DNA of 63,529 nucleotides, filler included, from Octopus bimaculoides (lineage: Eukaryota): assembly GCF_001194135.2 (NCBI RefSeq). It is 3 parts of 3 records of this genome, joined end to end, with 100 filler letters (N's around TTAATTAATTAA, not from the genome) between each part and the next. Parts side by side here need not be neighbours in the genome. Positions count along the whole stretch, not along the records: positions 30,300 to 49,715 come from NC_068994.1; 2 more parts are not named here. One strand, written 5' to 3'. How positions within the stretch are numbered: position 1 is the first letter of the stretch; each line of letters begins with the position of its first letter. The notes below the pieces were generated by a model. It did no database searches. It had not been told where the DNA came from and saw nothing but the letters and a program-made list of their open reading frames with translations. The translations under genes were made by a program, and so were the position numbers. Below, piece by piece: positions 30,300 to 48,650 of the stretch.

Positions 30300-30639
30300 C
30301 CGCTGTCCTACATAGAACTCTATCTAGATACGATCTCGACGATCCGACGCGGTTTGTCCAAGTCCACGTTGGCACGTTCGGATGGTCGAGTCGGAACCTG
30401 TCAGACAAATGGAAACGTCTGAGCAGGTCTTTGAGGCACTTACATCCCCTTCTACTCCTATCCACTCCCACATAGTCTATATGCGTGTCCAAGGTAGCGT
30501 TCCAGTCCCCTACTAACAGTAAAGGTCGTGACGTTCCCAGGAAAACCTCTAGACGTCTAAGGAAATCCGCCCGACCCGTTAAGGACGGTGCATACACTGC
30601 CACCAGACGGAAAGCACACCCGTTTGTGCCATCGACAGA
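30300..30639 (-). mobile_element. APE-type endonuclease fragment of a Tx1/L1-clade LINE ORF2
   Basis: Uninterrupted FRLVAVYAP..LLLVGDWNATLD..PTWTW..SRSYLDRVL; GDWN and YLDR catalytic motifs; runs into a gap. Confidence 0.9.
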
Positions 30640-31016
30640 TCTGTACGTATATACGTGAGTATATGTATGGCTGTATGTATGCACTCATGTGTATAGATGT
30701 GTCTGTGCCTGTATTAAACGCTTTTCTTTCACACCTGTTGTATTTTGTTTTAGAATATACCCATTTCTTTCTTGTTTTCTTGTGTAACCTGCTTTGTATA
30801 TTTTTGAAAAGTGAATGAAATATCACATTCAAAAGTATTGGATATTTCTATAGTATCGAAAGTAACACAATTTAGAACTTACTGGATGTAATGAAACCCG
30901 GCTGACACCAGCTCTTTGAATAGTTGATTGGATGATAATGTAGAGTTTAAAATCTAAATTAAGAGCATGTTAGGTAAGTGTTAGGTAAACATTTTAATAA
31001 AACTAGTTTTGCAAAA

Positions 31017-31168
31017 AAATGTGCTTTTCTTTTTAAGACAACAGAATGAAATTTCACTGAGGTTTGAGGTGAACATGTAAACGCATCCCCGTTAATGCGT
31101 TTATATGTTCACTCGAATCTCTGTGAAATTTCATTCTGCTATCTTAAAGAAAAAGGAAAAGCACATTT
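31017..31168. repeat. About 150-bp near-perfect palindrome with 8-nt loop
   Basis: AAATGTGCTTTTC..GTAAACGCAT-CCCCGTTA-ATGCGTTTAT..GAAAAGCACATTT. Confidence 0.9.
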
Positions 31169-32465
31169 GAAACTATAGGTCTAGATATATAATAAGGCAG
31201 AATGGTCACGGCTAGAACGGCTATAAGCGTAAGGCAGATCAATCAGGTCTACTATTAGGTGAAAAACAACAACAGCCCGTTTCCTTTCTTTCTTTTTTTA
31301 GGTACAATTATTTCCTAGAAGGCACAAAGAATGGTTTCTAAATTATGACATAATTTGATGAGCGAGATACATTTAACGATTACTTATTTTATTATCACTA
31401 GGAAAGAGAAGACAAAGTCATCTCCGGCGAGATTTGAACTTACAATGTGATGAGCCATCAGATACTGGAAGCATTTTGTTTGGCTCATCTGATTCTGAAA
31501 TCCATCACTCTCTAAATGAAGAGGTATAATAACGGATATAATGCAGTATTTTATTCAAGAAAGTACAGACGATTCAGTTGTTGTGAACCAGAAATTTTAT
31601 CATTTCGATCTTATTGTGTCCATGGACATTTTGCCAAAATCTGAAATAGCTCAATACAAGTTACAAATGGCCAATATCAAGTTTACGAACAACTGTCACT
31701 GTAAAACTCAGGGCCCAAAAAGACGCTAAATTCAAATCTGCCCGGAGAAAATTTAAATTCTCGACTGCAAACTACCAAATTACATGCCATTATACCCATA
31801 TAATATTTTTTATGGTGACGTGCTCTATCGTTAATAATTTCATTGATAGGGTTGTGTCTTTCGCAGTTTGTTACACTAAGTCATTTCGCCTAGCCAGAAA
31901 GAAAGAACTGGTGAGCTCCGTAGACCTTCTGGACTGTTAAATTCCCAGAAAAATCCATTACTTGTCGTTTGTCGTTAATACCAATTTAATTGGGCTCAAA
32001 TTTCACATTTCGTATCTCCATCTTCAAAATTTAATGAAGCCTTTATATAAGTCAAAAAGAAATCGAACTCGTGAGTGGGGGTTGGTGAAAATAACCGAAA
32101 AGAGAGAGAGAGACAGACAGACAAAAACAAGGACGGACAGACAGACAGAGAGAGAAAGTGTGAGAGCCAGAGATGGAGAGAGAGAAAGAGATGCAAAATA
32201 CATATTGTATTTAATTTCATGTCGCTCGGATTTGAATTTCAGTCCGAACAGCATGATTGTCATCTTCTCGCTAAGGCTGTTGGGTTCACAGATTTACCCT
32301 GGATTTTTTGTTTATGAATATGTTAAAATTGATAGAGTTGCGTAGTTTCATTGAAGCGCTGTGATCAAAGTAGTTATCAAAATTATTTTTAAAAGCCAGT
32401 GGGATTCAAGTTTAAAATAACAGAATGAATATATAAATGACAATGACAAGAAGACAACTTAATCA

Positions 32466-32512
32466 TTATCTTATATTTCAATATTTCGATGTTAAAATCC
32501 CTTTATCATAAG
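32466..32512 (-). ncRNA. Decayed type I hammerhead ribozyme motif
   Basis: Minus strand TTATGATAA-AGGGATTTTAACATC-GAAA-TAT-TGAA-ATA-TA-AGATAA; the CUGAUGA core is mutated; lies downstream of the GIY-YIG relic. Confidence 0.4.
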
Positions 32513-32625
32513 AAAAAGAGGGTATCTTTAGAAAAGGAGGGTATCTTTAGAAAATGGATGGTATCTAGTATCTTTAGTACAGGTATATGGCAAGTGACGG
32601 TTGTGACATATTCGAACAGGTATTG

Positions 32626-32904
32626 TTATAATATCCAATCCGTGTTGTGAAGTTCACGTTTATTTTTAGATGATAGTTTCAGTTTATCAATGAGAAAAGC
32701 CTTCTTAATCTTCAAAATGTTAACGTTCGTTTTATGGTCTCGGTATAAACAGTGATGTTTTTGAGTGTCACGTTTATCTAGAAGTATTTGTGAGGACGTT
32801 TTCCTTAATTCTAATATGTAATTTGTGCACGGCGACTCCAATACAGGATCCACCAAGTTATTTTTGCAGATTATTTCGTACACCATAAGTCTTCGAGCAC
32901 GCAT
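32626..32904 (-). mobile_element. Penelope-like element GIY-YIG endonuclease relic
   Basis: VYEIICKN..HCLYRDH..NILKIKKAFLIDKLKLSSKNKREL resembles the PLE endonuclease C-terminus. Confidence 0.65.
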
Positions 32905-33488
32905 CTATGTTAGCGATGGTGTAGTAAATTAAAGTTTATTAATGTTCATTTGTCATTTATGATAGTTAATTTTGAGAGACTTTACGGTCCACCTTGTTGC
33001 GAATGCGCGCATGTTACAGATTCAGAAAATTTCATTTTGCATGTAAGAGACGGTAAGTATAATTTTTAGTTTGTGTCAATGTTTGTATATCTTAATTAAG
33101 CGATAGAAGGTAGGGAGTCTTGTGCTGCAGCAAATATTCGTCCAAATGTTGTTTATGATAACCTCAAACTGGCTGGACATGATATATCCGAATATCAGCT
33201 CTTAGAAATGATGCAGAATTTCTTTCGTTGTCTGAAGGTACACAAGCAGTATTTTAGATAATAGATTGTGTAAAGCAAGAAGTTAAAATCTGGAGAGGTT
33301 ATGAGATAGAGCATGGCATTTTTGTACAATATTGAATTTTAACTTTAACATTGTGCTTGTGTGGAGAGAGTAGAGTAGTTTTCCAAAACTGCAGGTAGAA
33401 AACCTTGGTGACTTAGAAGTAGAGCCGGCATCTATTTTAGATGGGAACTGCTTTTGTAAAAACCAACTGCCATGTTGGGCCTAAAGCA

Positions 33489-34593
33489 TTTATCAAAAAA
33501 ATGTTATTGTTCCATAAGAACAAATCAATTCTTGATTTTTGGAGAGTCAGTTTATATTGAATATAAAAATATATGTGCTTTGCATTTTGAAATGAGCTGC
33601 AATTAATGCTAAAGGAGTTCCTTTATTAATAAGTTCTCCTAAATGATGAAAGCTACCAATAGAAATACTAATTGTAGTTTTAATTTTCTCATTTTACTAC
33701 TAGGTAAAAAAAAAAACTGTTTTTCTAGTTTATTGCGAACATGAGGTTTTACAGCAATATTTATTTATATATTTATTTATTTATTTTTGCTGAAGAACCT
33801 TATTTTGTTAAACTGGCTTTGTGAACTTATATTTCAACATTGCTAACATATTTCACTTCACTCATCCAATTTGAAAATTGTCGATTATTTTAGTCAGGAT
33901 TTTTCGAAACATTTTATCATACATTATTACTTACTCGTAAAAAAATGCCCGTAGTTTTTTTGTTTTTTTAATTCTTAGGTTGTCAAGACATTTCACAGCT
34001 AAACAAATTATGTGGCAGCTGTTTGAACGAGCTTTGGTACACGCTACTATTTTCAGTTTGTTTAATTGTGGAAGTCACACCCTATTCTCAAGGATTTCCA
34101 TTGTATTGACAACCTAAGAATTAAAACAAAAACTACGGCCATTTTATACTATGAGTAAGTTATAATGTATGATAAAATGTTTCGAAAAATCCTGACTAAA
34201 ATAATCGACAATTTTCAAATTGGATGAGTGAAGTAAAATGTGTTAGCAATGTTGAAATATAAGTTCACAAAGCCAATTTAACAAAGTAAGGTTCTTCAGC
34301 AATAAAGAAAAATAAATAAATAAATATTGCTGTAAAACATCATCTTCGCAATAAGCTAGAAAAGCAGTTTTTCTTACCTAGTAGTAAAATAAGAAAATTA
34401 AAACTACAATTAGTATTTTTATTAGTAGCTGTCATCATTTAGGAGAACTTATTAATGAAGGAACTCCTTTATCATTAATTGTAGCTCATTTCAAAATGCA
34501 AAGCGTTTATCAAAAACGTGTTATTGTTCCAAAAGAACAAATCAATTCTTGATTTTTGGAGAGTCAGTTTACATCGCATATAAAAATGTGTGC
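33489..34593. repeat. Foldback: direct repeat, 410-bp arm, 119-bp spacer, 399-bp inverted arm, direct repeat
   Basis: Arms 33577-33986 and 34106-34504 (about 90% by eye); direct repeats 33489-33578 and 34506-34593. Confidence 0.92.
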
Positions 34594-34919
34594 GCGCGCG
34601 TATGTGTTACCTATAACGATGAAATAAAATTGTAACAGTTCTTTTTGATGTGTTGCATCATGTTATGAAAACGCTGTCGATTGGCATTGAATATAATATT
34701 ATTAAAAACTCTTTTGCTATTGTAATACGAAGAGATTCTAACGTTTGAGATATTACAGATTCTTTCAATTCTCCAAACCTTTATGATATTCAGGTAAACC
34801 AAACTTGATTCTCATAAAATGCATCTGCCACTCTTTCTGCAATGGCTAGTATTTATAAAAGAAAATATAGTTAGTTGCTCTTTGCTTAATGAAAAATAGA
34901 CGAATGATTATTGTTCTAA

Positions 34920-35370
34920 TCTATATTATAATGACTGAAGAAGTGCGGGACTGTGTCCAGTTTATTTTTTTCCCCCACGTTATCAAAAATGTCATAGTAC
35001 TTTAAAGAAATTATAAGTGAATATTAAAAACTTTTAAACTAAGAAATTTATTTGTATATTAAACAACTCATAATGCCTTAATATTACAAGATACGCAGAA
35101 CTCAGCTCTTCTTATTGGTAAATGTAATTCATTAATTCACACCAGAGCATCTATTTTCAAATTTACTCAAGTGAAGTAAATTAGCATTTTCCCTTGACAG
35201 TCTCATCTCTTTTCCAATTTCGATTATCGTCTTTTTTAAACATTTCAAGGATTATTTTACCGATTACCGAATAAACTATATCAGAGTTTTTGTTCAATTC
35301 ATGTGCATATTGTCAATTTATACTATAATTTGCCAGCAGAATACCGCCCGGAGGGCAGTTTTTCTGCTAG
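34920..35370 (+). mobile_element. Non-autonomous Helitron (451 bp)
   Basis: A|TCTATATTATAA start, CCGCCC-GGA-GGGCAG hairpin, TTTTTCTGCTAG|T end; A/T insertion site. Confidence 0.7.
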
Positions 35371-36279
35371 TATAAGTAAATGGGTTGTGTGCGTGTGTGT
35401 TATCTGTGAGGATTTGCCACAAGGAATACAAAAAGCTGAAAGAAACTTTGCGTTTAGACTAGCTACCAATTTTTAACTGTTTATGTATATAGCAACATAT
35501 TTTCAAAGGACAGATTAATAAAAATGCTTCCATAATCCAAGTAAATGTTAAAGTGAGAGAGCTAACTGTAAATAAAGTGAAACCACACAACGAAGGCCTA
35601 TCTCTTATAGTGGATGGTAGCAGCCATGCACTCTATAAGTGGCTGAAAAGAGTCAGAAAATATTAGTTTATCAGGCAGAATAGTTTCTTGATATGGAGAA
35701 GACATGGCTAATGATATCCACTTATTGAAGTAAGCAGTATTATTTGATAACTGTAAATGAAACAACAGAAATCTGAATACACTATTGCTGACTATATTTT
35801 TAAATGAGATAATAGCAAACGGCTATGATATATTTTTACGTTATGAAATCTTCGATATCATCTTACAATTTTCTGTTTGATTTTCTTTTGTTGTGTCCAG
35901 AACATTGATATATTTTATCCTAATTCTTCTCCAAGTAACAAAATAATGCGAACAATACTTGCATATCTTTCAATATACTACTTTTTCACTAATGAAAATA
36001 TACATGAATCCGGCCGTAACGAAATAAAACCCTAACAAAAACTCAAGAACTAGCACCGAATATTTATGTCCTTCAAGCATATTTTAACACAGAAAATGTA
36101 TGGTACGGGATTTACTTGTTTAAAATCTATGCACGGGTGTAAAATCAACATTAAACGTAGTTACGAACGATGCACCATTTATGATAGGAACTTAAAAGGG
36201 AATTGTTTCTTTACTCAAGAAAGACATGGATGAGAGTCCACAGGATTCTAATAGCTTAATAATCTTTTAATCTTTCAAT

Positions 36280-36468
36280 CTTTTACTTGTTTCAGTCATT
36301 AGACTGCAGCCATGTTGGGGCATCACCTTGAGGGAATTTAGTCGAACTAATCGACCCCAGTACTTATTTCGTTTTTAAACCTGGTACGTATAGCATATGC
36401 CTCTTTTGCCGAACCGCTGAGTTATGTGGACGTAAACACACTAATACCGGTTCTCAGTCGGTGGTGGG

Positions 36469-36513
<45 letters not shown>

Positions 36514-36746
36514 GCCAATTCAAAGAACAAACAATTAGAAAACAGAGAAAAAAGAAAAAACATAGGGGTGTGCACAAGCAATATATTAATCTGTCGCTCG
36601 GTGAAAGGGGAGAGTTGTTAACGTATCGAGCATAGATCTTCATCGGAAAGAGAAAAGTCCAAAGCGAAAGAAAAAAAATAAGGGAAAATTATCAACAATC
36701 TACGTGCGTTTACATTTCAGGGTTATATTCGCGCGCACGTGCACAC

Positions 36747-36786
<40 letters not shown>

Positions 36787-36885
36787 GACAGGCTTCTTTC
36801 AATTTCCGTCTACCGAACACAAGGTTTTGGTCGGCCCAAGACTATAGTAGAAGACACTCGCCCATGGTGTGTCAGTATTTTTATT
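36280..36885 (-). mobile_element. CORE-type SINE sequence with (CA)n tracts, CpG-retaining
   Basis: 3' module 36280-36470 and core 36785-36885, in reverse complement. Confidence 0.8.
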
Positions 36886-37971
36886 CACCAAGCATAGGGC
36901 AGCGACCTGGCAGAATCGTTACCGCGTTGGACAAAATGCTTAGCAGCATTTCTTCTGCTTCTACTTTCTGAGTTCAAATGCCACCGNNNNNNNNNNNNNN
37001 NNNNNNNNNNNNNNNNNNNNNNNNNNNNNNNNNNNNNNNNNNNNNNNNNNNNNNNNNNNNNNNNNNNNNNNNNNNNNNNNNNNNNNNNNNNNNNNNNNNN
37101 NNNNNNNNNNNNNNNNNNNNNNNNNNNNNNNNNNNNNNNNNNNNNNNNNNNNNNNNNNNNNNNNNNNNNNNNNNNNNNNNNNNNNNNNNNNNNNNNNNNN
37201 NNNNNNNNNNNNNNNNNNNNNNNNNNNNNNNNNNNNNNNNNNNNNNNNNNNNNNNNNNNNNNNNNNNNNNNNNNNNNNNNNNNNNNNNNNNNNNNNNNNN
37301 NNNNNNNNNNNNNNNNNNNNNNNNNNNNNNNNNNNNNNNNNNNNNNNNNNNNNNNNNNNNNNNNNNNNNNNNNNNNNNNNNNNNNNNNNNNNNNNNNNNN
37401 NNNNNNNNNNNNNNNNNNNNNNNNNNNNNNNNNNNNNNNNNNNNNNNNNNNNNNNNNNNNNNNNNNNNNNNNNNNNNNNNNNNNNNNNNNNNNNNNNNNN
37501 NNNNNNNNNNNNNNNNNNNNNNNNNNNNNNNNNNNNNNNNNNNNNNNNNNNNNNNNNNNNNNNNNNNNNNNNNNNNNNNNNNNNNNNNNNNNNNNNNNNN
37601 NNNNNNNNNNNNNNNNNNNNNNNNNNNNNNNNNNNNNNNNNNNNNNNNNNNNNNNNNNNNNNNNNNNNNNNNNNNNNNNNNNNNNNNNNNNNNNNNNNNN
37701 NNNNNNNNNNNNNNNNNNNNNNNNNNNNNNNNNNNNNNNNNNNNNNNNNNNNNNNNNNNNNNNNNNNNNNNNNNNNNNNNNNNNNNNNNNNNNNNNNNNN
37801 NNNNNNNNNNNNNNNNNNNNNNNNNNNNNNNNNNNNNNNNNNNNNNNNNNNNNNNNNNNNNNNNNNNNNNNNNNNNNNNNNNNNNNNNNNNNNNNNNNNN
37901 NNNNNNNNNNNNNNNNNNNNNNNNNNNNNNNNNNNNNNNNNNNNNNNNNNNNNNNNNNNNNNNNNNNNNNN

Positions 37972-38499: not shown

Positions 38500-38730
38500 T
38501 CAAATTTTGGCACTAAGTCAGCAATTTTTGGGCACGGGGTAAGTCATTTACATCGAGCACAGTACTCAACTGGTATAAAACAAGTTGAGCACAGTATTCA
38601 ACTTATTTTATTGACCCCGAAAGAATGAAAGGCAAAGTCGACCTCGGCGGAATTTGAACTAAGGACGTAAGAACGGACAAAGGTCGATAAGATTTTGTCC
38701 CGCGTGCTATCGATTCTGCCAACTCACCAC
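38500..38730 (-). mobile_element. tRNA-derived SINE (GGCGGCGAGCTGG family)
   Basis: GACCCCGAAAGAATGAAAGGCAAAGTCGACCTCGGCGGAATTTGAAC. Confidence 0.8.
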
Positions 38731-38842: not shown

Positions 38843-39471
38843 ATTATTATTGAGTGAGAGAGCAATGCATGCCATCAAAGTGACGCTGGGGTAAAATATA
38901 CGAAGCCCATTATACCCATCATGACTACCCGTCTGATAAGGGTACACCAGGCACATGCATCACAACCATATGTGCGCGACATGGTGATCTCATATCAAGA
39001 TAATCTGCGCATGACCTCGCAGGTGGGGCCCAGTTAGAATTTTTTTCAGGTCGAGTAGCCCATCCCGCTCAAAAGGTCCCTGAATAAGGTTTGTTTAACG
39101 ATGTTGAGTAAAACACCCATGTTTCCAAAGGTGAATTATTCAAACCCCAAAGNNNNNNNNNNNNNNNNNNNNNNNNNNNNNNNNNNNNNNNNNNNNNNNN
39201 NNNNNNACCCCAAAGAATTCCTCTCAACACATGGCCATGATGCTCCCCCACTACTTCTGCTCATGATCATAGATGCACATATCGTCAGCCACCAAGGGAC
39301 ATGCTCAACTGGTTAAGGTCAAACAAGTGACAAGCAAATATGTGGTATTGAGCAGAATATTTGCCGTAGCCCATCTTTTATACTAAGACAAAACAATGTA
39401 CATGATAACACTTCCAATCAGTTAAGATCAGAAGCCATGAGAGTCACTGCCTGGTACTGCATCCGGGCATC

Positions 39472-41299: not shown

Positions 41300-41522
41300 T
41301 CCTTTGTATAATGATGGTTTCAAATTTTGCCACAGGGGCAGCCATTTTGGGGGAAGAGACTAACCGACTACATCGACCCTTTGCTTCACTGGTACTTAAT
41401 TTACCGAGTCCAAAAGGATGAAAGGCAAAGTCAACCTCAGTGGAATTCGAACTCAGAACGTAGCGGCGGGCGAAATACCGCCAAGCATTTAGTCCAGTGC
41501 GATAACGATTCTGCCCGCTCGC
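41300..41522 (-). mobile_element. tRNA-derived SINE (GGCGGCGAGCTGG family)
   Basis: GGATGAAAGGCAAAGTCAACCTCAGTGGAATTCGAACTCAGAACG. Confidence 0.8.
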
Positions 41523-42299
41523 AGTCTTATTCCTTTGTATAATACGAAACTGTATTATCGTAATCATATATATTATTATTCAAATTATGTACATTTAGTA
41601 ATAATATATTACTCATTTTTGTTTTCTTTCTTTGTAAACTAGAAAGTGTCAAAACGTTTCCACATTATAGAATATAATACTGCTAAGAAATACAGCAAAG
41701 TTGAATGCATCGGTATATGTGTTGTTCTTTTTTATGACAAACATGACTCGCGCAATCTGTTTCAGTTTCAACATACGAACTTAGATCATGTCACTTGCCA
41801 AGCAAGTATAATTCCTATATATTCATTTATTATTATTAATAAGCACATTTAAGCAAACAAGCATAACATCAAGAAACAATTTACAAATTAATATAATCAA
41901 AACACACAAAATAATCATGAAAAAAAAACTCCTCATAACTTGACACACAAAATACAATAGCGGTTACAACTCTTCTGCTTTCACGCTCACATCTTCTAGT
42001 CCTTTCAGGAAATCTATATAGGTGACATAGTTCTAATTTCACTGAACGGCTTTTCGCTTAATCCATTTTTCACTTATATCGAAGCTTCTGCCTCACGTTA
42101 TCTTCACAAGTTATGAGTAATACTCAAACGTCATTTTAAACACACAAAATCCATTTCACTTTTCTCAAATCAATAAAAACCTAACACACACACGTACACA
42201 CACTCTCATACACACACACTCATACATACACATACATATGTATTATATATATACATATGTATATATACACATACATATGTATTATATATATACATATGC

Positions 42300-42358
<59 letters not shown>

Positions 42359-42439
42359 CAATACTAACGTGCACACATACGTATGCATGCATATACATAA
42401 GTATATATGTGTATGAGTGTATGTATGTATATATATATT

Positions 42440-42830
42440 CTTTTATTTGTTTCAGTCATTTGACTTCGGCCATGTTGGAACACCACCTTAAGGGGTTTTA
42501 GTCGAACAAATCGACCCAAGGACTTTTCTTTGTAAGCCTAGTACTTATTCTATCGGTCTTTTGCCGAACCACTAGGTTATGGGGGACATAAAGAGACTAA
42601 CATCGGTAGTCAAGCGATGGTAGGAGGACAAACACAGATACAAACACACACACACGCGCTCATATACGACGGGTATCTTTCAGTTTTCGTCTACCAAATC
42701 CACTCACACGGCTTTGATTGGCCCAAGGCTATAATAGAAGGCACTTACCCAAGGTGTTTGGTAGTGGGACTGAACCCGAAACCATGTTGTTGGGAAGCAA
42801 GCTTCTTACCACACAGCCACGTCTGCGCCT
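42440..42830 (-). mobile_element. Near full-length CORE-type SINE
   Basis: 3' module, short (CA) tract, core and head in reverse complement. Confidence 0.85.
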
Positions 42831-44090: not shown

Positions 44091-46095
44091 TTGGGTTATA
44101 ACTATTCAGATTGTGTACAATTTGCGTCCACTATGCCCAATCAAAATTGACCCAATTAATTTTTTTAGAAAATTCTGGCAGAATGTAAGTCATTCATAGC
44201 AGAATATAGTGGCAGTATACGTGTACTAAGATAGTAATACAGTGTTGCCAATGCGGTGGAAATCAGCAACATCTAGTATCATTTTTTACAGAAGGAAGAC
44301 AAGAAAAAATATTTCGGGTAAAATAAAAAACTGGACCTAGACTTCGGAGTGGTGCTAATACCTTGAAGGTGTAGGTGACTTAGAGAAAATACTAGTGTTC
44401 TTAAACTATGAAGTGAGCAACAACTTGGCTTTAATAATTCTTCTTTTTATGAAGAAGAAATATGTTGACTTTCGTAGACACTTGGAGACTGGTGAGATCG
44501 TCGCAGGTAATGTTCTTTTGGATAGGCTGACAGAAGAAAGACCTGGGGAGAGTGGTTTTTCGGATAGTTTTTCGTGATTGAGTGACAACATTGCGATCGA
44601 TTCTTCTATCATTTCCTCTCTCACCAGCTAGAAATTGTTAGTGTTGTACCATAAGAAAATTCATGAGGGGTCACTCACAGCAGCCACTTCCCAAGAAATT
44701 TCTTGTATAAGAATGACATCCAACAAGAACTGCCGATGTCTGGGCTGATGTGCNNNNNNNNNNNNNNNNNNNNNNNNNNNNNNNNNNNNNNNNNNNNNNN
44801 NNNNNNNNNNNNNNNNNNNNNNNNNNNNNNNNNNNNNNNNNNNNNNNNNNNNNNNNNNNNNNNNNNNNNNNNNNNNNNNNNNNNNNNNNNNNNNNNNNNN
44901 NNNNNNNNNNNNNNNNNNNNNNNNNNNNNNNNNNNNNNNNNNNNNNNNNNNNNNNNNNNNNNNNNNNNNNNNNNNNNNNNNNNNNNNNNNNNNNNNNNNN
45001 NNNNNNNNNNNNNNNNNNNNNNNNNNNNNNNNNNNNNNNNNNNNNNNNNNNNNNNNNNNNNNNNNNNNNNNNNNNNNNNNNNNNNNNNNNNNNNNNNNNN
45101 NNNNNNNNNNNNNNNNNNNNNNNNNNNNNNNNNNNNNNNNNNNNNNNNNNNNNNNNNNNNNNNNNNNNNNNNNNNNNNNNNNNNNNNNNNNNNNNNNNNN
45201 NNNNNNNNNNNNNNNNNNNNNNNNNNNNNNNNNNNNNNNNNNNNNNNNNNNNNNNNNNNNNNNNNNNNNNNNNNNNNNNNNNNNNNNNNNNNNNNNNNNN
45301 NNNNNNNNATATATATATATATACATGTATGTACGTATGTATGTATGTATGTATGTATGTATGTATGTATGTATACACACACTGACACACACACACAGAC
45401 ACACACATATATACACTAGTAGAAAGGCCACCTTCCAGCAGTGGTTTTCTACTAGTTGCTAAATAGTATTTACATATTTGATTCACAATTTGCATAATCT
45501 TTCCGTTACATCTAATTTTCCTTTGTATCTTATATTCGTTTAATAGTATTCACTTGTTCAGTAAATTCAATGCGTAACTAGAGAACTCTGCTCCACTGAA
45601 TTTGTTTCCTCATAATCTTATGAAAAACGAATATTTCTAATGAAAGTTTCTTCAAATACGTTTCAGACGGTATATGCTATGATTATACCGGAATATGTGG
45701 TGAAAAACATCTGGGGAGAAGTGTTTCGGATAATTCACGCACTTCAAATTTCTTTCCTCATAGCGTTCATAAAAATGAGTATTTTTTAATGAAATTTTCT
45801 ACCAATAACTTTTAGATGGTTTAGATTACGATTTTATAAGAATTTAGTATGAAAAAAACTGAGGAGAAACGTATTTTTCACGCGTCTCGACTTTCTTTCC
45901 ATATCGTTTAGATGATTTAATTACAATTATGTTGAAAAAAAGTACTTTTGAGACCTATGTGTTTCCTGCTGTTTCTAGCATACTATACGAAATCGTATGG
46001 GATGGACTACACTTGAGTTTGTTTAAAGAGAGCGATTAAGATTGTAATAAAATAATGGATGAAATATCTTTTCAATAATTAGTTCTAGCATAATG

Positions 46096-46270
46096 GTGGC
46101 GAGCTGGCAAAATTTTTACAGAGCCGGACAAAATGCTTTGCGACATATCTTTCGAATTTACTTTCTTAGTTCAAAGTCTTCTGGGATCGACTTTACCTTT
46201 CGTCCCTTCCGGGGTCAATAAAATAAGTACCAGTTGAATACTGGAGTCGATATAACCGACTTACCCCCTG
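46096..46270 (+). mobile_element. tRNA-derived SINE (GGCGGCGAGCTGG family)
   Basis: GGTGGCGAGCTGGC..CCTTTCGTCCCTTCCGGGGTCAATAAAATAAGTACCAG. Confidence 0.8.
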
Positions 46271-46869: not shown

Positions 46870-47940
46870 AGAACACTACAGAAGGCCCGCTACTTGCTTT
46901 TCTCAATTTACGTACAATACTCAGTGACATATCTGGAAGCTTCTATCGTTCCCTTAACTCTTTTGGTGAAACTAGAATCATCGCTCTTGATATCTGAAAG
47001 ACTTTTGACAGAGTGTGATAAACTGGACTGATCTATAAGCCCAGAGGCTATGGCCTGCCTTGGCCGTTCCTAAGTATAAGGTCATTTCTTTCAAATTGCA
47101 AAATGAAGGTGGTCATTGATGGCCGGCAGTTGGAATCATATGCTATCAATGCTGGAGTACCCCAAAGTTTTGTACTTGGTCCTACTCTTTTTCTCTTTTT
47201 CATTAATGATCTTCTAGACGAAATTGTTTCTAAACTGCCATCTGTGTCGATGGCATGGCTCCTTAATCTGGTCATGACAAAATTAGCGGCTTTGAGCTGG
47301 TTGTCTTTCTTAAGGATGTACATCATGCGGTCATGAAATGGGATAGTGACTGACTGGTGACTTTTAATGCTAGCAATACAAAGCTTTTGTCACTTAATCA
47401 TTATAGGTAGCAATCCTTCCCCTCCATTGGGGAAGTGGGGACTGATCTTTCAGAAAGCTATAGTATCCGACGTCATCTCTCTTGGAACAAGCACTTTCAG
47501 TCCATTGCCATGTCGACAGCCAAGAAGGTTGGATCTTTCTTCCATGCTTACAAGTTTCTTACATTGCTGTTTTCTTTGGGTTGGTGCCTCCTCCGGGTTT
47601 CTTATTTACTTGACCGAATTTAGGATCGAATCGTTAATATGGTGGGAACTCTTCTTTCTATTTAATGTGGAATCTTTGGCTCATCGTTAAAACTTATATT
47701 CGTTCTGTCTCTTCTATAAGTATTTCCATGGTGAGCTTTATCATCTGGTACCCTCTGTCAAAACCTTTAAACGTGCTTTCCGCTTCTTTTGCCAAGCGCA
47801 TCATTTCTCTGTTAAGCTTCCTGTTAGCTATAATGCCTTTATTCAGATAGCTTCTTTCTTCGAATTACTGCTCCTTGGAACTCTATCATCGCCTTCACTT
47901 CCTCTCGGCTATGATATTCGGTCCTTTAAGCTTTCTTTTC
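46870..47940 (+). mobile_element. CR1/L2-type LINE RT region, decayed
   Basis: IIALDI-KTFDRV and INAGVPQSFVLGPTLFLFFINDL (RT domains 3 and 5 region). Confidence 0.88.
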
Positions 47941-48210
47941 CTTTGTGGTTATTTCCACCAACGTGGCCGAATACAATCACATTAAAAATAAATGATAATT
48001 AATAATTAATAAATATTGTTTATTTTTGTAATTGTAATTGTGCTATTTTCGTTACAAATTAATTTGTAACTTTTTTATAATTTAATGATAGCATGTCAGA
48101 CTATTCTAGTAATACCTGACTTTGCAAGGTGTTCTATCTTGTTTAGATTGTTGCAATGATTGTTGCATTGAGAAATAAACACGGAGTCAAATTAATAATT
48201 ATTATTTCTA

Positions 48211-48650
48211 AGGCGGCGAGCTGGCAGAAACGTTAGCACACCGGGCGAAATGCTTAGCAGTATTTCATCTGGCTTTACATTCTGAGTTCAAATTCCGCCG
48301 AGGTTGACTTCGCCTTTCATCCTTTCGGGGTCGATAAATTAAGTACTAGCTGCGTCATAGAGTCGATTTAATCGACTGGCTCCCTCCCCCAAAATTTCGG
48401 GCCTTGTGCCTAGAGGAGAAAAGAATAATCATTTCTAAGGCGGTGAGCTGGCAGAAACGTTAGGACACCGAACAAAATGCTTAGCGGTATTTCGTCTGTC
48501 TTTACGTTCTGAGTTCAAGTTGAGCCGAGGTCCACTTTGCCTTTCATCCTTTCGGGGATGATAAATAAAGTACCAGTTGCGTAGTGAGGTCGATCTAATC
48601 GACTGGCCTCCCTCCCCCTTGGGCGTTGTGCCGAGAGTAGAAAAGAATAT
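48211..48650 (+). mobile_element. Head-to-tail dimer of the GGCGGCGAGCTGG SINE
   Basis: Two diverged copies with (ATT)ATTTCT at 48201, 48431 and 48653. Confidence 0.88.

What the first reader, a model, noticed from the sequence alone, without database searches (positions are those of the whole stretch)
33489..34593. 1.1-kb foldback flanked by an about 90-bp direct repeat
Seen: DR (33489-33578), arm (33577-33986), 119-bp spacer, inverted arm (34106-34504), DR (34506-34593). The repeats abut the arm tips exactly and are direct, so this is not just two inverted copies of one repeat. About 90 bp is far longer than the TSDs of cut-and-paste transposons. DR and arms look similarly diverged, suggesting one event. 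Inference: an undescribed foldback element class, a PLE-type rearranged insertion (PLE relic 600 bp away) or a fork-stall inverted duplication; any transcript would form about 400 bp of dsRNA.
Basis: partly seen in the sequence, partly recalled or inferred. Interest (0 to 1): 0.72.

Follow-up and report, generated by a model that had tools for sequence, protein, structure and literature searches.

The report
Inverted-repeat insertion with ~90-bp target duplication
A real, old, non-coding 0.9-kb hairpin-shaped insertion sits between two copies of about 90 bp of its target; it is most simply a one-off insertion at a widely staggered break, probably made by retroelement machinery, and nothing shows it is a new kind of mobile element.

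Summary
A 96-nt direct repeat (33483-33578 and 34500-34595, 90% identical) brackets two inverted arms (33577-33990 and 34102-34504, 93.5% identical) around a unique 111-nt centre. Repeats and arms overlap by 2 nt (GC) on the left and 5 nt (AAAGC) on the right. This is far beyond chance, and the 7-10% divergence rules out a chimeric-read or haplotype artefact.

The structure has no ORF over 45 aa, no Pfam domain within about 2.5 kb, no Rfam family (no hammerhead) and no tRNA. No second copy of any part exists in the 19-kb piece. The only coding relic is a LINE AP-endonuclease fragment 2.8 kb upstream.

Best reading: one insertion event at two nicks about 90 bp apart. Filling the 3' overhangs made the direct repeat. 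Both target 3' ends were joined by microhomology to the same terminus of the inserted sequence, as in head-to-head retroelement insertions. A 126-bp TSD (R9) is a precedent for the length.

Modest interest.

The parts
33483..33578 (.). Direct repeat copy 1 (A1), read as the left copy of the duplicated target. Its last 2 nt (GC) are shared with the left arm.
   Evidence: family D1, 96 nt, 90%. GC 22.9%; it carries A/T at all 9 GC-changing differences from copy 2.
33577..33990 (.). Left arm (B) of the inverted repeat, 414 nt. T-rich on the + strand (AT skew -0.15). Contains an (ATTT)n microsatellite at 33758-33786.
   Evidence: (alignment with the reverse complement of the right arm, 93.5%).
33991..34101 (.). 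Unique centre (S), 111 nt. Not significantly palindromic and unrelated to the arms or the DR. Its strand skew matches the left arm, a weak hint that B+S is one continuous 525-nt copy.
   Evidence: local alignment scores 9-13 against A and B, the same as background; AT skew -0.16; GC 37.8% against 26% in the arms.
34102..34504 (.). Right arm (B'), 403 nt, A-rich on the + strand. Its last 5 nt (AAAGC) are shared with DR copy 2.
34500..34595 (.). Direct repeat copy 2 (A2), read as the right copy of the duplicated target. It keeps 3 CpG that are TpG/CpA in copy 1.
34584..34606 (.). TA/TG/CG microsatellite-like tract (ATGTGTGCGCGCGCGTATGTGT) spanning the right end of the duplicated target. This is the inferred position of the top-strand break.
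   Evidence: Read directly. The bias of PLE insertions towards microsatellites is from PMC8557442.

Best explanation
This is the relic of a single insertion event, not a working element.

A target stretch of about 90 bp (A) was nicked on the bottom strand at its left edge (GGGCCT|AAAGC) and on the top strand at its right edge, inside a TA/TG/CG microsatellite. That left two 3' overhangs of about 90 nt. About 0.92 kb of foreign, non-coding sequence was placed between them. It consists of two inverted copies of the same sequence, one about 525 nt and one about 403 nt, joined at their inner ends. Filling in the overhangs produced the direct repeat.

The most likely engine is target-primed reverse transcription by a retroelement enzyme (a PLE, or a LINE of the kind that cuts with a long stagger). 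There are two variants. Either both target 3' ends primed on the same 3' terminus (...GCAAAGC) of the template, using 5 nt and 2 nt of microhomology. Or one end primed, the cDNA snapped back on itself, and its end was joined to the other overhang. All four repeat units then decayed together by about 7-10%.

Shown: the anatomy, the junction overlaps, equal divergence and the absence of coding or RNA-family signal. Inferred: the staggered break, the RNA template, and that the arm tips are a 3' terminus.

If the locus is transcribed it would fold into about 400 bp of dsRNA. No function is implied.
For: - Both arms end at the same base directly against the two DR copies, and the junctions overlap by 5 nt (AAAGC) and 2 nt (GC). 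Inference: an overlap of at least 5 nt is expected by chance about once in 1000 junctions.
- The inner ends of the arms are unequal, leaving a unique 111 nt. That is what two 5'-truncated copies of different length would give.
- DR and arms have statistically indistinguishable divergence.
- No short TSD flanks the arm tips or the whole unit (read).
- No part of the structure recurs in the 19-kb piece.
- The strand that ends at each tip is A-rich, as retroelement sense strands usually are (weak).
- Literature: PLE insertions are often 5'-truncated with an adjacent inverted 5'-truncated copy and favour microsatellites, and Naiad PLEs lack hammerheads (PMC8557442). A. vaga PLEs are head-to-head and flanked by TSDs (PMC3846280).
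- Literature: 3'-overhang staggers give TSDs, and the stagger can reach 126 bp in R9 (PMC6895275). The reciprocal 3' end can prime by microhomology in L1 (PMC11702581).
Against: - There is no evidence that the arm is a repeated element or an RNA-derived sequence.
- There is no poly(A), no 3' microsatellite tail, no hammerhead, no RT/EN remnant and no PLE "tail".
- 89-96 bp is far above the 8-10 bp PLE TSDs reported in A. vaga and the 10-20 bp of AP-endonuclease LINEs.
- No microhomology could be shown at the inner junction.
- The DR differences are one-sided: copy 1 is A/T at 9 of 9 GC-changing sites. Simple shared neutral decay does not predict this.
- No empty orthologous site and no read support could be examined.
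Confidence: 0.45

Rival explanations
1. DNA-level capture with no reverse transcription. A palindromic or snap-back DNA fragment from elsewhere in the genome was ligated by end joining into a break with about 90-nt 3' overhangs (two nearby nicks on opposite strands), and the overhangs were filled in.
For: It gives the same anatomy and the same junction microhomologies. It also explains the lack of any retroelement hallmark.
Against: It needs an independent source both for a preformed 0.9-kb foldback fragment and for two nicks 90 bp apart. Templated or captured insertions at breaks are usually much shorter or are plain linear fragments (established knowledge).
Confidence: 0.17
2. In-situ replication error (fork stalling and template switching, or MMBIR). 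One half, for example S-B'-A, is native, and the other half, A-B, was copied in by serial template switches.
For: Microhomology at the junctions. The GC content of S (37.8%) resembles the left flank (36.8%) more than the arms. No foreign signature is present.
Against: Because the outer repeat is direct while the inner one is inverted, three switches that reuse the same breakpoints are required. The simple fold-back product would carry an inverted outer repeat.
Confidence: 0.12
3. A member of an unrecognised cut-and-paste or foldback DNA transposon family (long TIRs, short centre) whose integration duplicates about 90 bp.
For: 414/403-nt terminal inverted repeats with a 111-nt centre look like a foldback or MITE-type element, and the flanking duplication abuts the tips.
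Against: No second copy is in the piece. The tips match no known superfamily terminus, and there is no transposase nearby. No known DDE or other cut-and-paste system makes TSDs above about 15 bp (established knowledge). One locus cannot define a class.
Confidence: 0.08
4. Two or more independent events: a tandem duplication of A followed by insertion of a foldback exactly at the duplication junction, or A and B are ordinary repeats placed side by side by separate insertions.
For: The one-sided substitution pattern of the DR, which the arms do not show, hints that the DR and the arms need not share one history.
Against: It requires exact coincidence of three boundaries. Divergences are compatible with one age. 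Neither A nor B recurs locally.
Confidence: 0.08
5. Assembly artefact in a gapped short-read scaffold.
For: The piece carries three N gaps, and inverted repeats are error-prone for assemblers. PLE structures are known to upset short-read assemblies (PMC8557442).
Against: The copies differ by 6.5-10% with indels, so they are not chimeric-read palindromes or duplicated haplotypes. The structure lies in continuous sequence, 2.4 kb from the nearest gap.
Confidence: 0.04

Closest known systems
Penelope-like element (PLE) insertions with an adjacent inverted 5'-truncated copy (head-to-head pLTR structures)
   Same: Two inverted copies with their common terminus facing outward, unequal inner truncation, a flanking target duplication, no poly(A) and a target at a microsatellite (PMC8557442, PMC3846280).
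   Different: The TSD here is 89-96 bp, against 8-10 bp or indiscernible. There is no hammerhead, no 30-40-bp tail and no RT/GIY-YIG remnant, and the arm has not been shown to be a PLE end.
R9 rDNA-specific non-LTR retrotransposon (126-bp TSD)
   Same: A very long target duplication produced by distant staggered first- and second-strand cuts with 3' overhangs (PMC6895275, citing Gladyshev and Arkhipova 2009).
   Different: R9 is a site-specific, coding element inserted in one orientation. Here there is no ORF, the site is not rDNA, and the insert is an inverted duplication.
L1 twin priming / 5'-inverted insertions
   Same: Both 3' ends of one staggered break act as primers, with microhomology at the junctions and the TSD preserved (PMC11702581).
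   Different: Twin priming inverts a different, upstream part of one RNA, so no long duplicated arms result. Its TSDs are 12-18 bp and a poly(A) is present.
Foldback / long-TIR DNA transposons (Drosophila FB, Galileo, MULE-type MITEs)
   Same: Long terminal inverted repeats around a short centre, and non-coding.
   Different: Those give fixed 7-11-bp TSDs, occur as families, and FB arms are built of tandem subrepeats. None of this is seen here.
Hairpin-RNA (hpRNA) / endo-siRNA loci
   Same: An inverted repeat of about 400 bp that would fold into a long dsRNA.
   Different: No evidence of transcription, small RNAs or a target gene. This could not be tested.

Membership tests
Penelope-like element insertion | PLE reverse transcriptase and GIY-YIG endonuclease coding sequence in or next to the insertion | tested here: not met
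   No Pfam hit at E<=1 in six frames of 31000-35990. No paired GIY/YIG motif and no YxDD motif in the piece; the one loose GIY-pattern hit at 36107 stands alone. A heavily 5'-truncated copy need not carry them.
Penelope-like element insertion | Hammerhead ribozyme motif in the pLTR (canonical clades; Naiads lack it) | tested here: not met
   No Rfam match at gathering score, and no hammerhead at E<=10 in 32000-36000.
Penelope-like element insertion | Inverted 5'-truncated copy abutting the element, with the common terminus outward, flanked by a TSD | tested here: inconclusive
   The geometry fits. The polarity of the arms is unknown, and the TSD is about ten times the reported length.
Penelope-like element insertion | The arm sequence belongs to a multi-copy family with PLE 3' ends | not testable with these tools
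   No collection held this genome. The protein-collection negative is uninformative, because the piece's own high-copy SINE also found nothing.
Non-LTR (LINE/SINE) target-primed insertion | Poly(A) or a simple-repeat 3' tail at the junction with the target | tested here: not met
   The arm tips end ...CAAAATGCAAAGC with no tail. There is no tRNA-like part.
Non-LTR (LINE/SINE) target-primed insertion | Target-site duplication from a 3'-overhang stagger, with microhomology between the target 3' end and the template end | tested here: met
   An 89-96-nt direct repeat with 5-nt and 2-nt overlaps. The length is within the published extreme (126 bp in R9).
Cut-and-paste foldback / MITE DNA transposon | Short TSD of fixed length (2-11 bp) directly flanking the TIR tips | tested here: not met
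   No short direct repeat flanks 33577/34504, nor 33483/34595.
Cut-and-paste foldback / MITE DNA transposon | Several copies with conserved termini | tested here: inconclusive
   No other copy in the 19.4-kb piece.
LTR-type miniature retrotransposon (TRIM) | Direct terminal repeats with TG..CA ends, a primer-binding site, a polypurine tract and a 4-6-bp TSD | tested here: not met
   The DR starts AAAGC and ends GTGC. No TGG primer-binding site follows copy 1. The flanks GGCCT and GCGCG differ.
DIRS-like element | Inverted terminal repeats plus an internal complementary region that matches the termini | tested here: not met
   The centre has no significant similarity to the arms or the DR in either orientation.

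The most novel reading that the evidence does not exclude
The structure is one copy of a still undescribed non-autonomous element, or of a distinct insertion mode of an octopus-type PLE or RLE-LINE. In that reading the element regularly integrates as a head-to-head foldback and duplicates about 90 bp of target, so such loci would be scattered through the genome as ready-made long-dsRNA hairpins.
Probability: 0.08. Interest if true: 0.65.

Novelty: new variant of a known kind. Interest (0 to 1): 0.3.

Why it matters
As a single decayed locus it matters little. It is one more complex insertion in a repeat-rich invertebrate genome.

It would matter if a genome-wide search showed many foldbacks with about 90-bp duplications. 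That would define an integration mode with an unusually long, regular stagger. It would give sequence-level evidence on the poorly understood PLE (or RLE-LINE) second-strand step. It would also identify a source of long hairpin RNAs, which are potential ADAR or Dicer substrates.

Tried and rejected
**Searches for other copies or the orthologous site all failed**
- Four exact ORF look-ups found nothing.
- A metagenome scan with a 20-mer conserved in both arms gave one chance hit with no further similarity.
- Prokaryote genome contigs and viral contigs gave nothing.
- A six-frame translation of 33400-34700 against 5.8 billion proteins gave no hit. The same test with the piece's own abundant SINE also gave none, so that negative says nothing about copy number.
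- The LINE endonuclease relic found only four hits, at most 69% identical, on short contigs of no use.
- The PLE consensus sequences of PMC8557442 are not held as supplements.

**Readings rejected**
- TRIM/LTR element: no TG..CA ends, primer-binding site or short TSD.
- DIRS-like element: no internal complementary region.
- Parvovirus-like snap-back genome: the centre is not a terminal palindrome.
- Inversion with staggered breaks: this would give inverted flanking duplications, not direct ones.
- tRNA-derived SINE: none found.
- Foldback arms built of tandem subrepeats: only an (ATTT)n run is present.
- MDA or chimeric-read palindrome: the copies are 6.5% diverged.

Full report
**Observation**

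- A 96-nt direct repeat lies at 33483-33578 and 34500-34595 (86/96 identical, ungapped).
- Between its copies are two inverted arms, 33577-33990 and 34102-34504. A global alignment of the left arm with the reverse complement of the right arm gives 375/401 identical positions and four indel events.
- The arms are separated by 111 unique bases (33991-34101).

The repeats do more than abut the arm tips: they overlap them. GC at 33577-78 can be read as the end of repeat copy 1 or the start of the left arm. AAAGC at 34500-04 can be read as the end of the right arm or the start of copy 2. The unambiguous duplicated stretch is 89 nt.

The longest exact direct and inverted matches in 32500-35600 are 39 and 73 nt. 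The maxima in 200 first-order Markov simulations were 17 and 22 nt. Chance is excluded.

The copies differ by 6.5-10% and by indels. They therefore cannot be chimeric-read palindromes or duplicated haplotypes, although the piece is a gapped scaffold (N runs at 36987-37971, 39153-39206 and 44754-45308).

**What the parts contain**

- The longest ORF touching the structure is 45 aa.
- Six-frame translations of 31000-35990 hit no Pfam family at E<=1 apart from a low-complexity artefact.
- No Rfam family reaches its threshold in the piece. At E<=10 only three chance-level miRNA matches appear in 32000-36000, and no hammerhead.
- There is no tRNA-like gene.
- The only tandem repeat is an (ATTT)n run that is mirrored in both arms.
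- A sensitive blastn of each part against the rest of the 19.4-kb piece finds only low-complexity matches. Locally, A, B and S are unique.
- The centre is not significantly palindromic and is unrelated to the arms or the direct repeat.

The only coding relic nearby is a LINE AP-endonuclease fragment on the minus strand at 30300-30684 (Exo_endo_phos, E = 8e-8). It lies 2.8 kb upstream and is cut by the edge of the piece.

**Age and history**

Kimura distances are 0.092-0.114 for the direct repeat and 0.068 for the arms, which is not significantly different (Fisher p = 0.19). Without CpG sites the counts are 7/96 and 25/401. One event followed by common decay is therefore compatible with the data.

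One oddity remains. At all 9 GC-changing differences, repeat copy 1 carries A/T and copy 2 carries G/C (sign test p about 0.004). Three of these sites are CpGs kept only in copy 2, and three lie in the microsatellite edge. The arms are symmetric at 9 against 10. I cannot explain this, and it slightly weakens the simple one-event picture.

**Mechanism**

The most economical reading is L-A-Y before the event and L-A-[B-S-B']-A-Y after it. That is an insertion at a break whose two nicks lay about 90 bp apart and left 3' overhangs. Filling them in duplicates A. This is the general origin of target-site duplications, and 3'-overhanging staggers as long as 126 bp are documented for the R9 retrotransposon (PMC6895275).

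Three features point to target-primed synthesis rather than cut-and-paste transposition:
- Both arms end at exactly the same base against the target.
- That terminus (...GCAAAGC) overlaps the bottom-strand primer end by 5 nt and the top-strand primer end by 2 nt. This is the pattern expected if each target 3' end annealed to the end of the same template.
- The inner ends are unequal, as for two 5'-truncated copies.

A head-to-head pair of 5'-truncated copies flanked by a TSD is the published signature of PLE insertions. PLE insertions also favour microsatellites, and in the Naiad clade they lack hammerheads (PMC8557442; PMC3846280). Use of the reciprocal 3' end as a second primer through microhomology is documented for L1 (PMC11702581). 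The right edge of the duplicated target lies in ATGTGTGCGCGCGCGTATGTGT.

A one-primer variant gives the same product: the cDNA snaps back, copies itself, and is joined to the other overhang by the 2-nt overlap.

Two weaker hints:
- The strand that ends at each tip is A-rich (AT skew +0.15).
- The centre shares the skew of the left arm, which suggests a 525-nt copy on the left and a 403-nt copy on the right.

**Limits**

None of this shows that the arm is a retroelement end. There is no tail, no ribozyme, no coding remnant and no PLE "tail" extension. The duplication is about ten times longer than the PLE TSDs reported in A. vaga.

Rivals that remain open:
- Capture of a palindromic DNA fragment at a doubly nicked site.
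- Serial template switching in situ. This needs three switches, because the outer repeat is direct.
- An unknown long-TIR DNA transposon family.
- Two separate events.
- A misassembly, which is unlikely.

**External evidence could not be obtained**

- Exact ORF look-ups failed.
- DNA pattern scans of metagenome, prokaryote and viral contigs found only one chance 20-mer.
- A six-frame protein search found nothing. A control with the piece's own high-copy SINE was equally empty, so copy number remains unknown.
- The organism was not identified by any tool. The tRNA-like SINE copies and the (CA)n/(TATG)n microsatellites resemble what I recall of octopus genomes, which is recollection only. If that is right, PLEs and Dong-R4 (RLE) LINEs are abundant and recently active there, and the cited rate (JC 0.065 for about 18 My) would date the event to roughly 10-15 My (PMC13282606).

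**Consequence**

A transcript through the locus would fold into about 400 bp of nearly perfect dsRNA (MFE -601.5 kcal/mol). Whether it is transcribed, edited or diced is untested.

**Verdict**

This is a real and neatly resolved structural relic. It is best explained as a single retroelement-type head-to-head insertion with an exceptionally long target duplication. It is an unusual variant of known behaviour rather than a new element class, unless a genome-wide search shows that it recurs.

Noticed in passing
window 30300-30684 (- strand): Relic of a LINE apurinic/apyrimidinic endonuclease domain (Pfam Exo_endo_phos, E = 8e-8), cut off by the left edge of the piece. The closest proteins in the 5.8-billion collection are only 69% identical.
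   Followed up: partly
window 48194-48390 and 48421-48617; also 36895-36986, 46092-46268, 41388-41530 (-), 38601-38681 (-): At least six copies of one SINE-like repeat, 71-89% alike, two of them in direct tandem 227 bp apart. ARAGORN finds no intact tRNA in them.
   Followed up: partly
window 36279-36817 and 42439-42698: A second dispersed repeat. Its head matches at 85% (36279-36365 / 42439-42525) and its tail at 79% (36747-36817 / 42628-42698). The first copy is stretched by about 280 bp, which includes an internal (CA)n expansion.
   Followed up: no
window 33483-33578 vs 34500-34595: One-sided substitutions between the two direct-repeat copies: copy 1 has A/T at 9 of 9 GC-changing differences (GC 22.9% against 32.3%). 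The inverted arms are symmetric. Unexplained.
   Followed up: partly
window 47048-47326 (- strand): A 92-aa ORF containing a ...VGPSTKLWGTPA... stretch that looks like a transposable-element protein remnant. It has no Pfam match.
   Followed up: partly
window 36987-37971, 39153-39206, 44754-45308: Three assembly gaps (N runs of 985, 54 and 555), each bordered by (GT)n, (TA)n or (TATG)n microsatellites. The piece comes from a gapped scaffold.
   Followed up: no
window 32075-32320 (+ strand): A charged low-complexity ORF (RERDRQTKTRTDRQTERE...) produced by a purine-rich simple repeat. It gives a spurious weak Atrophin-1 Pfam match.
   Followed up: yes
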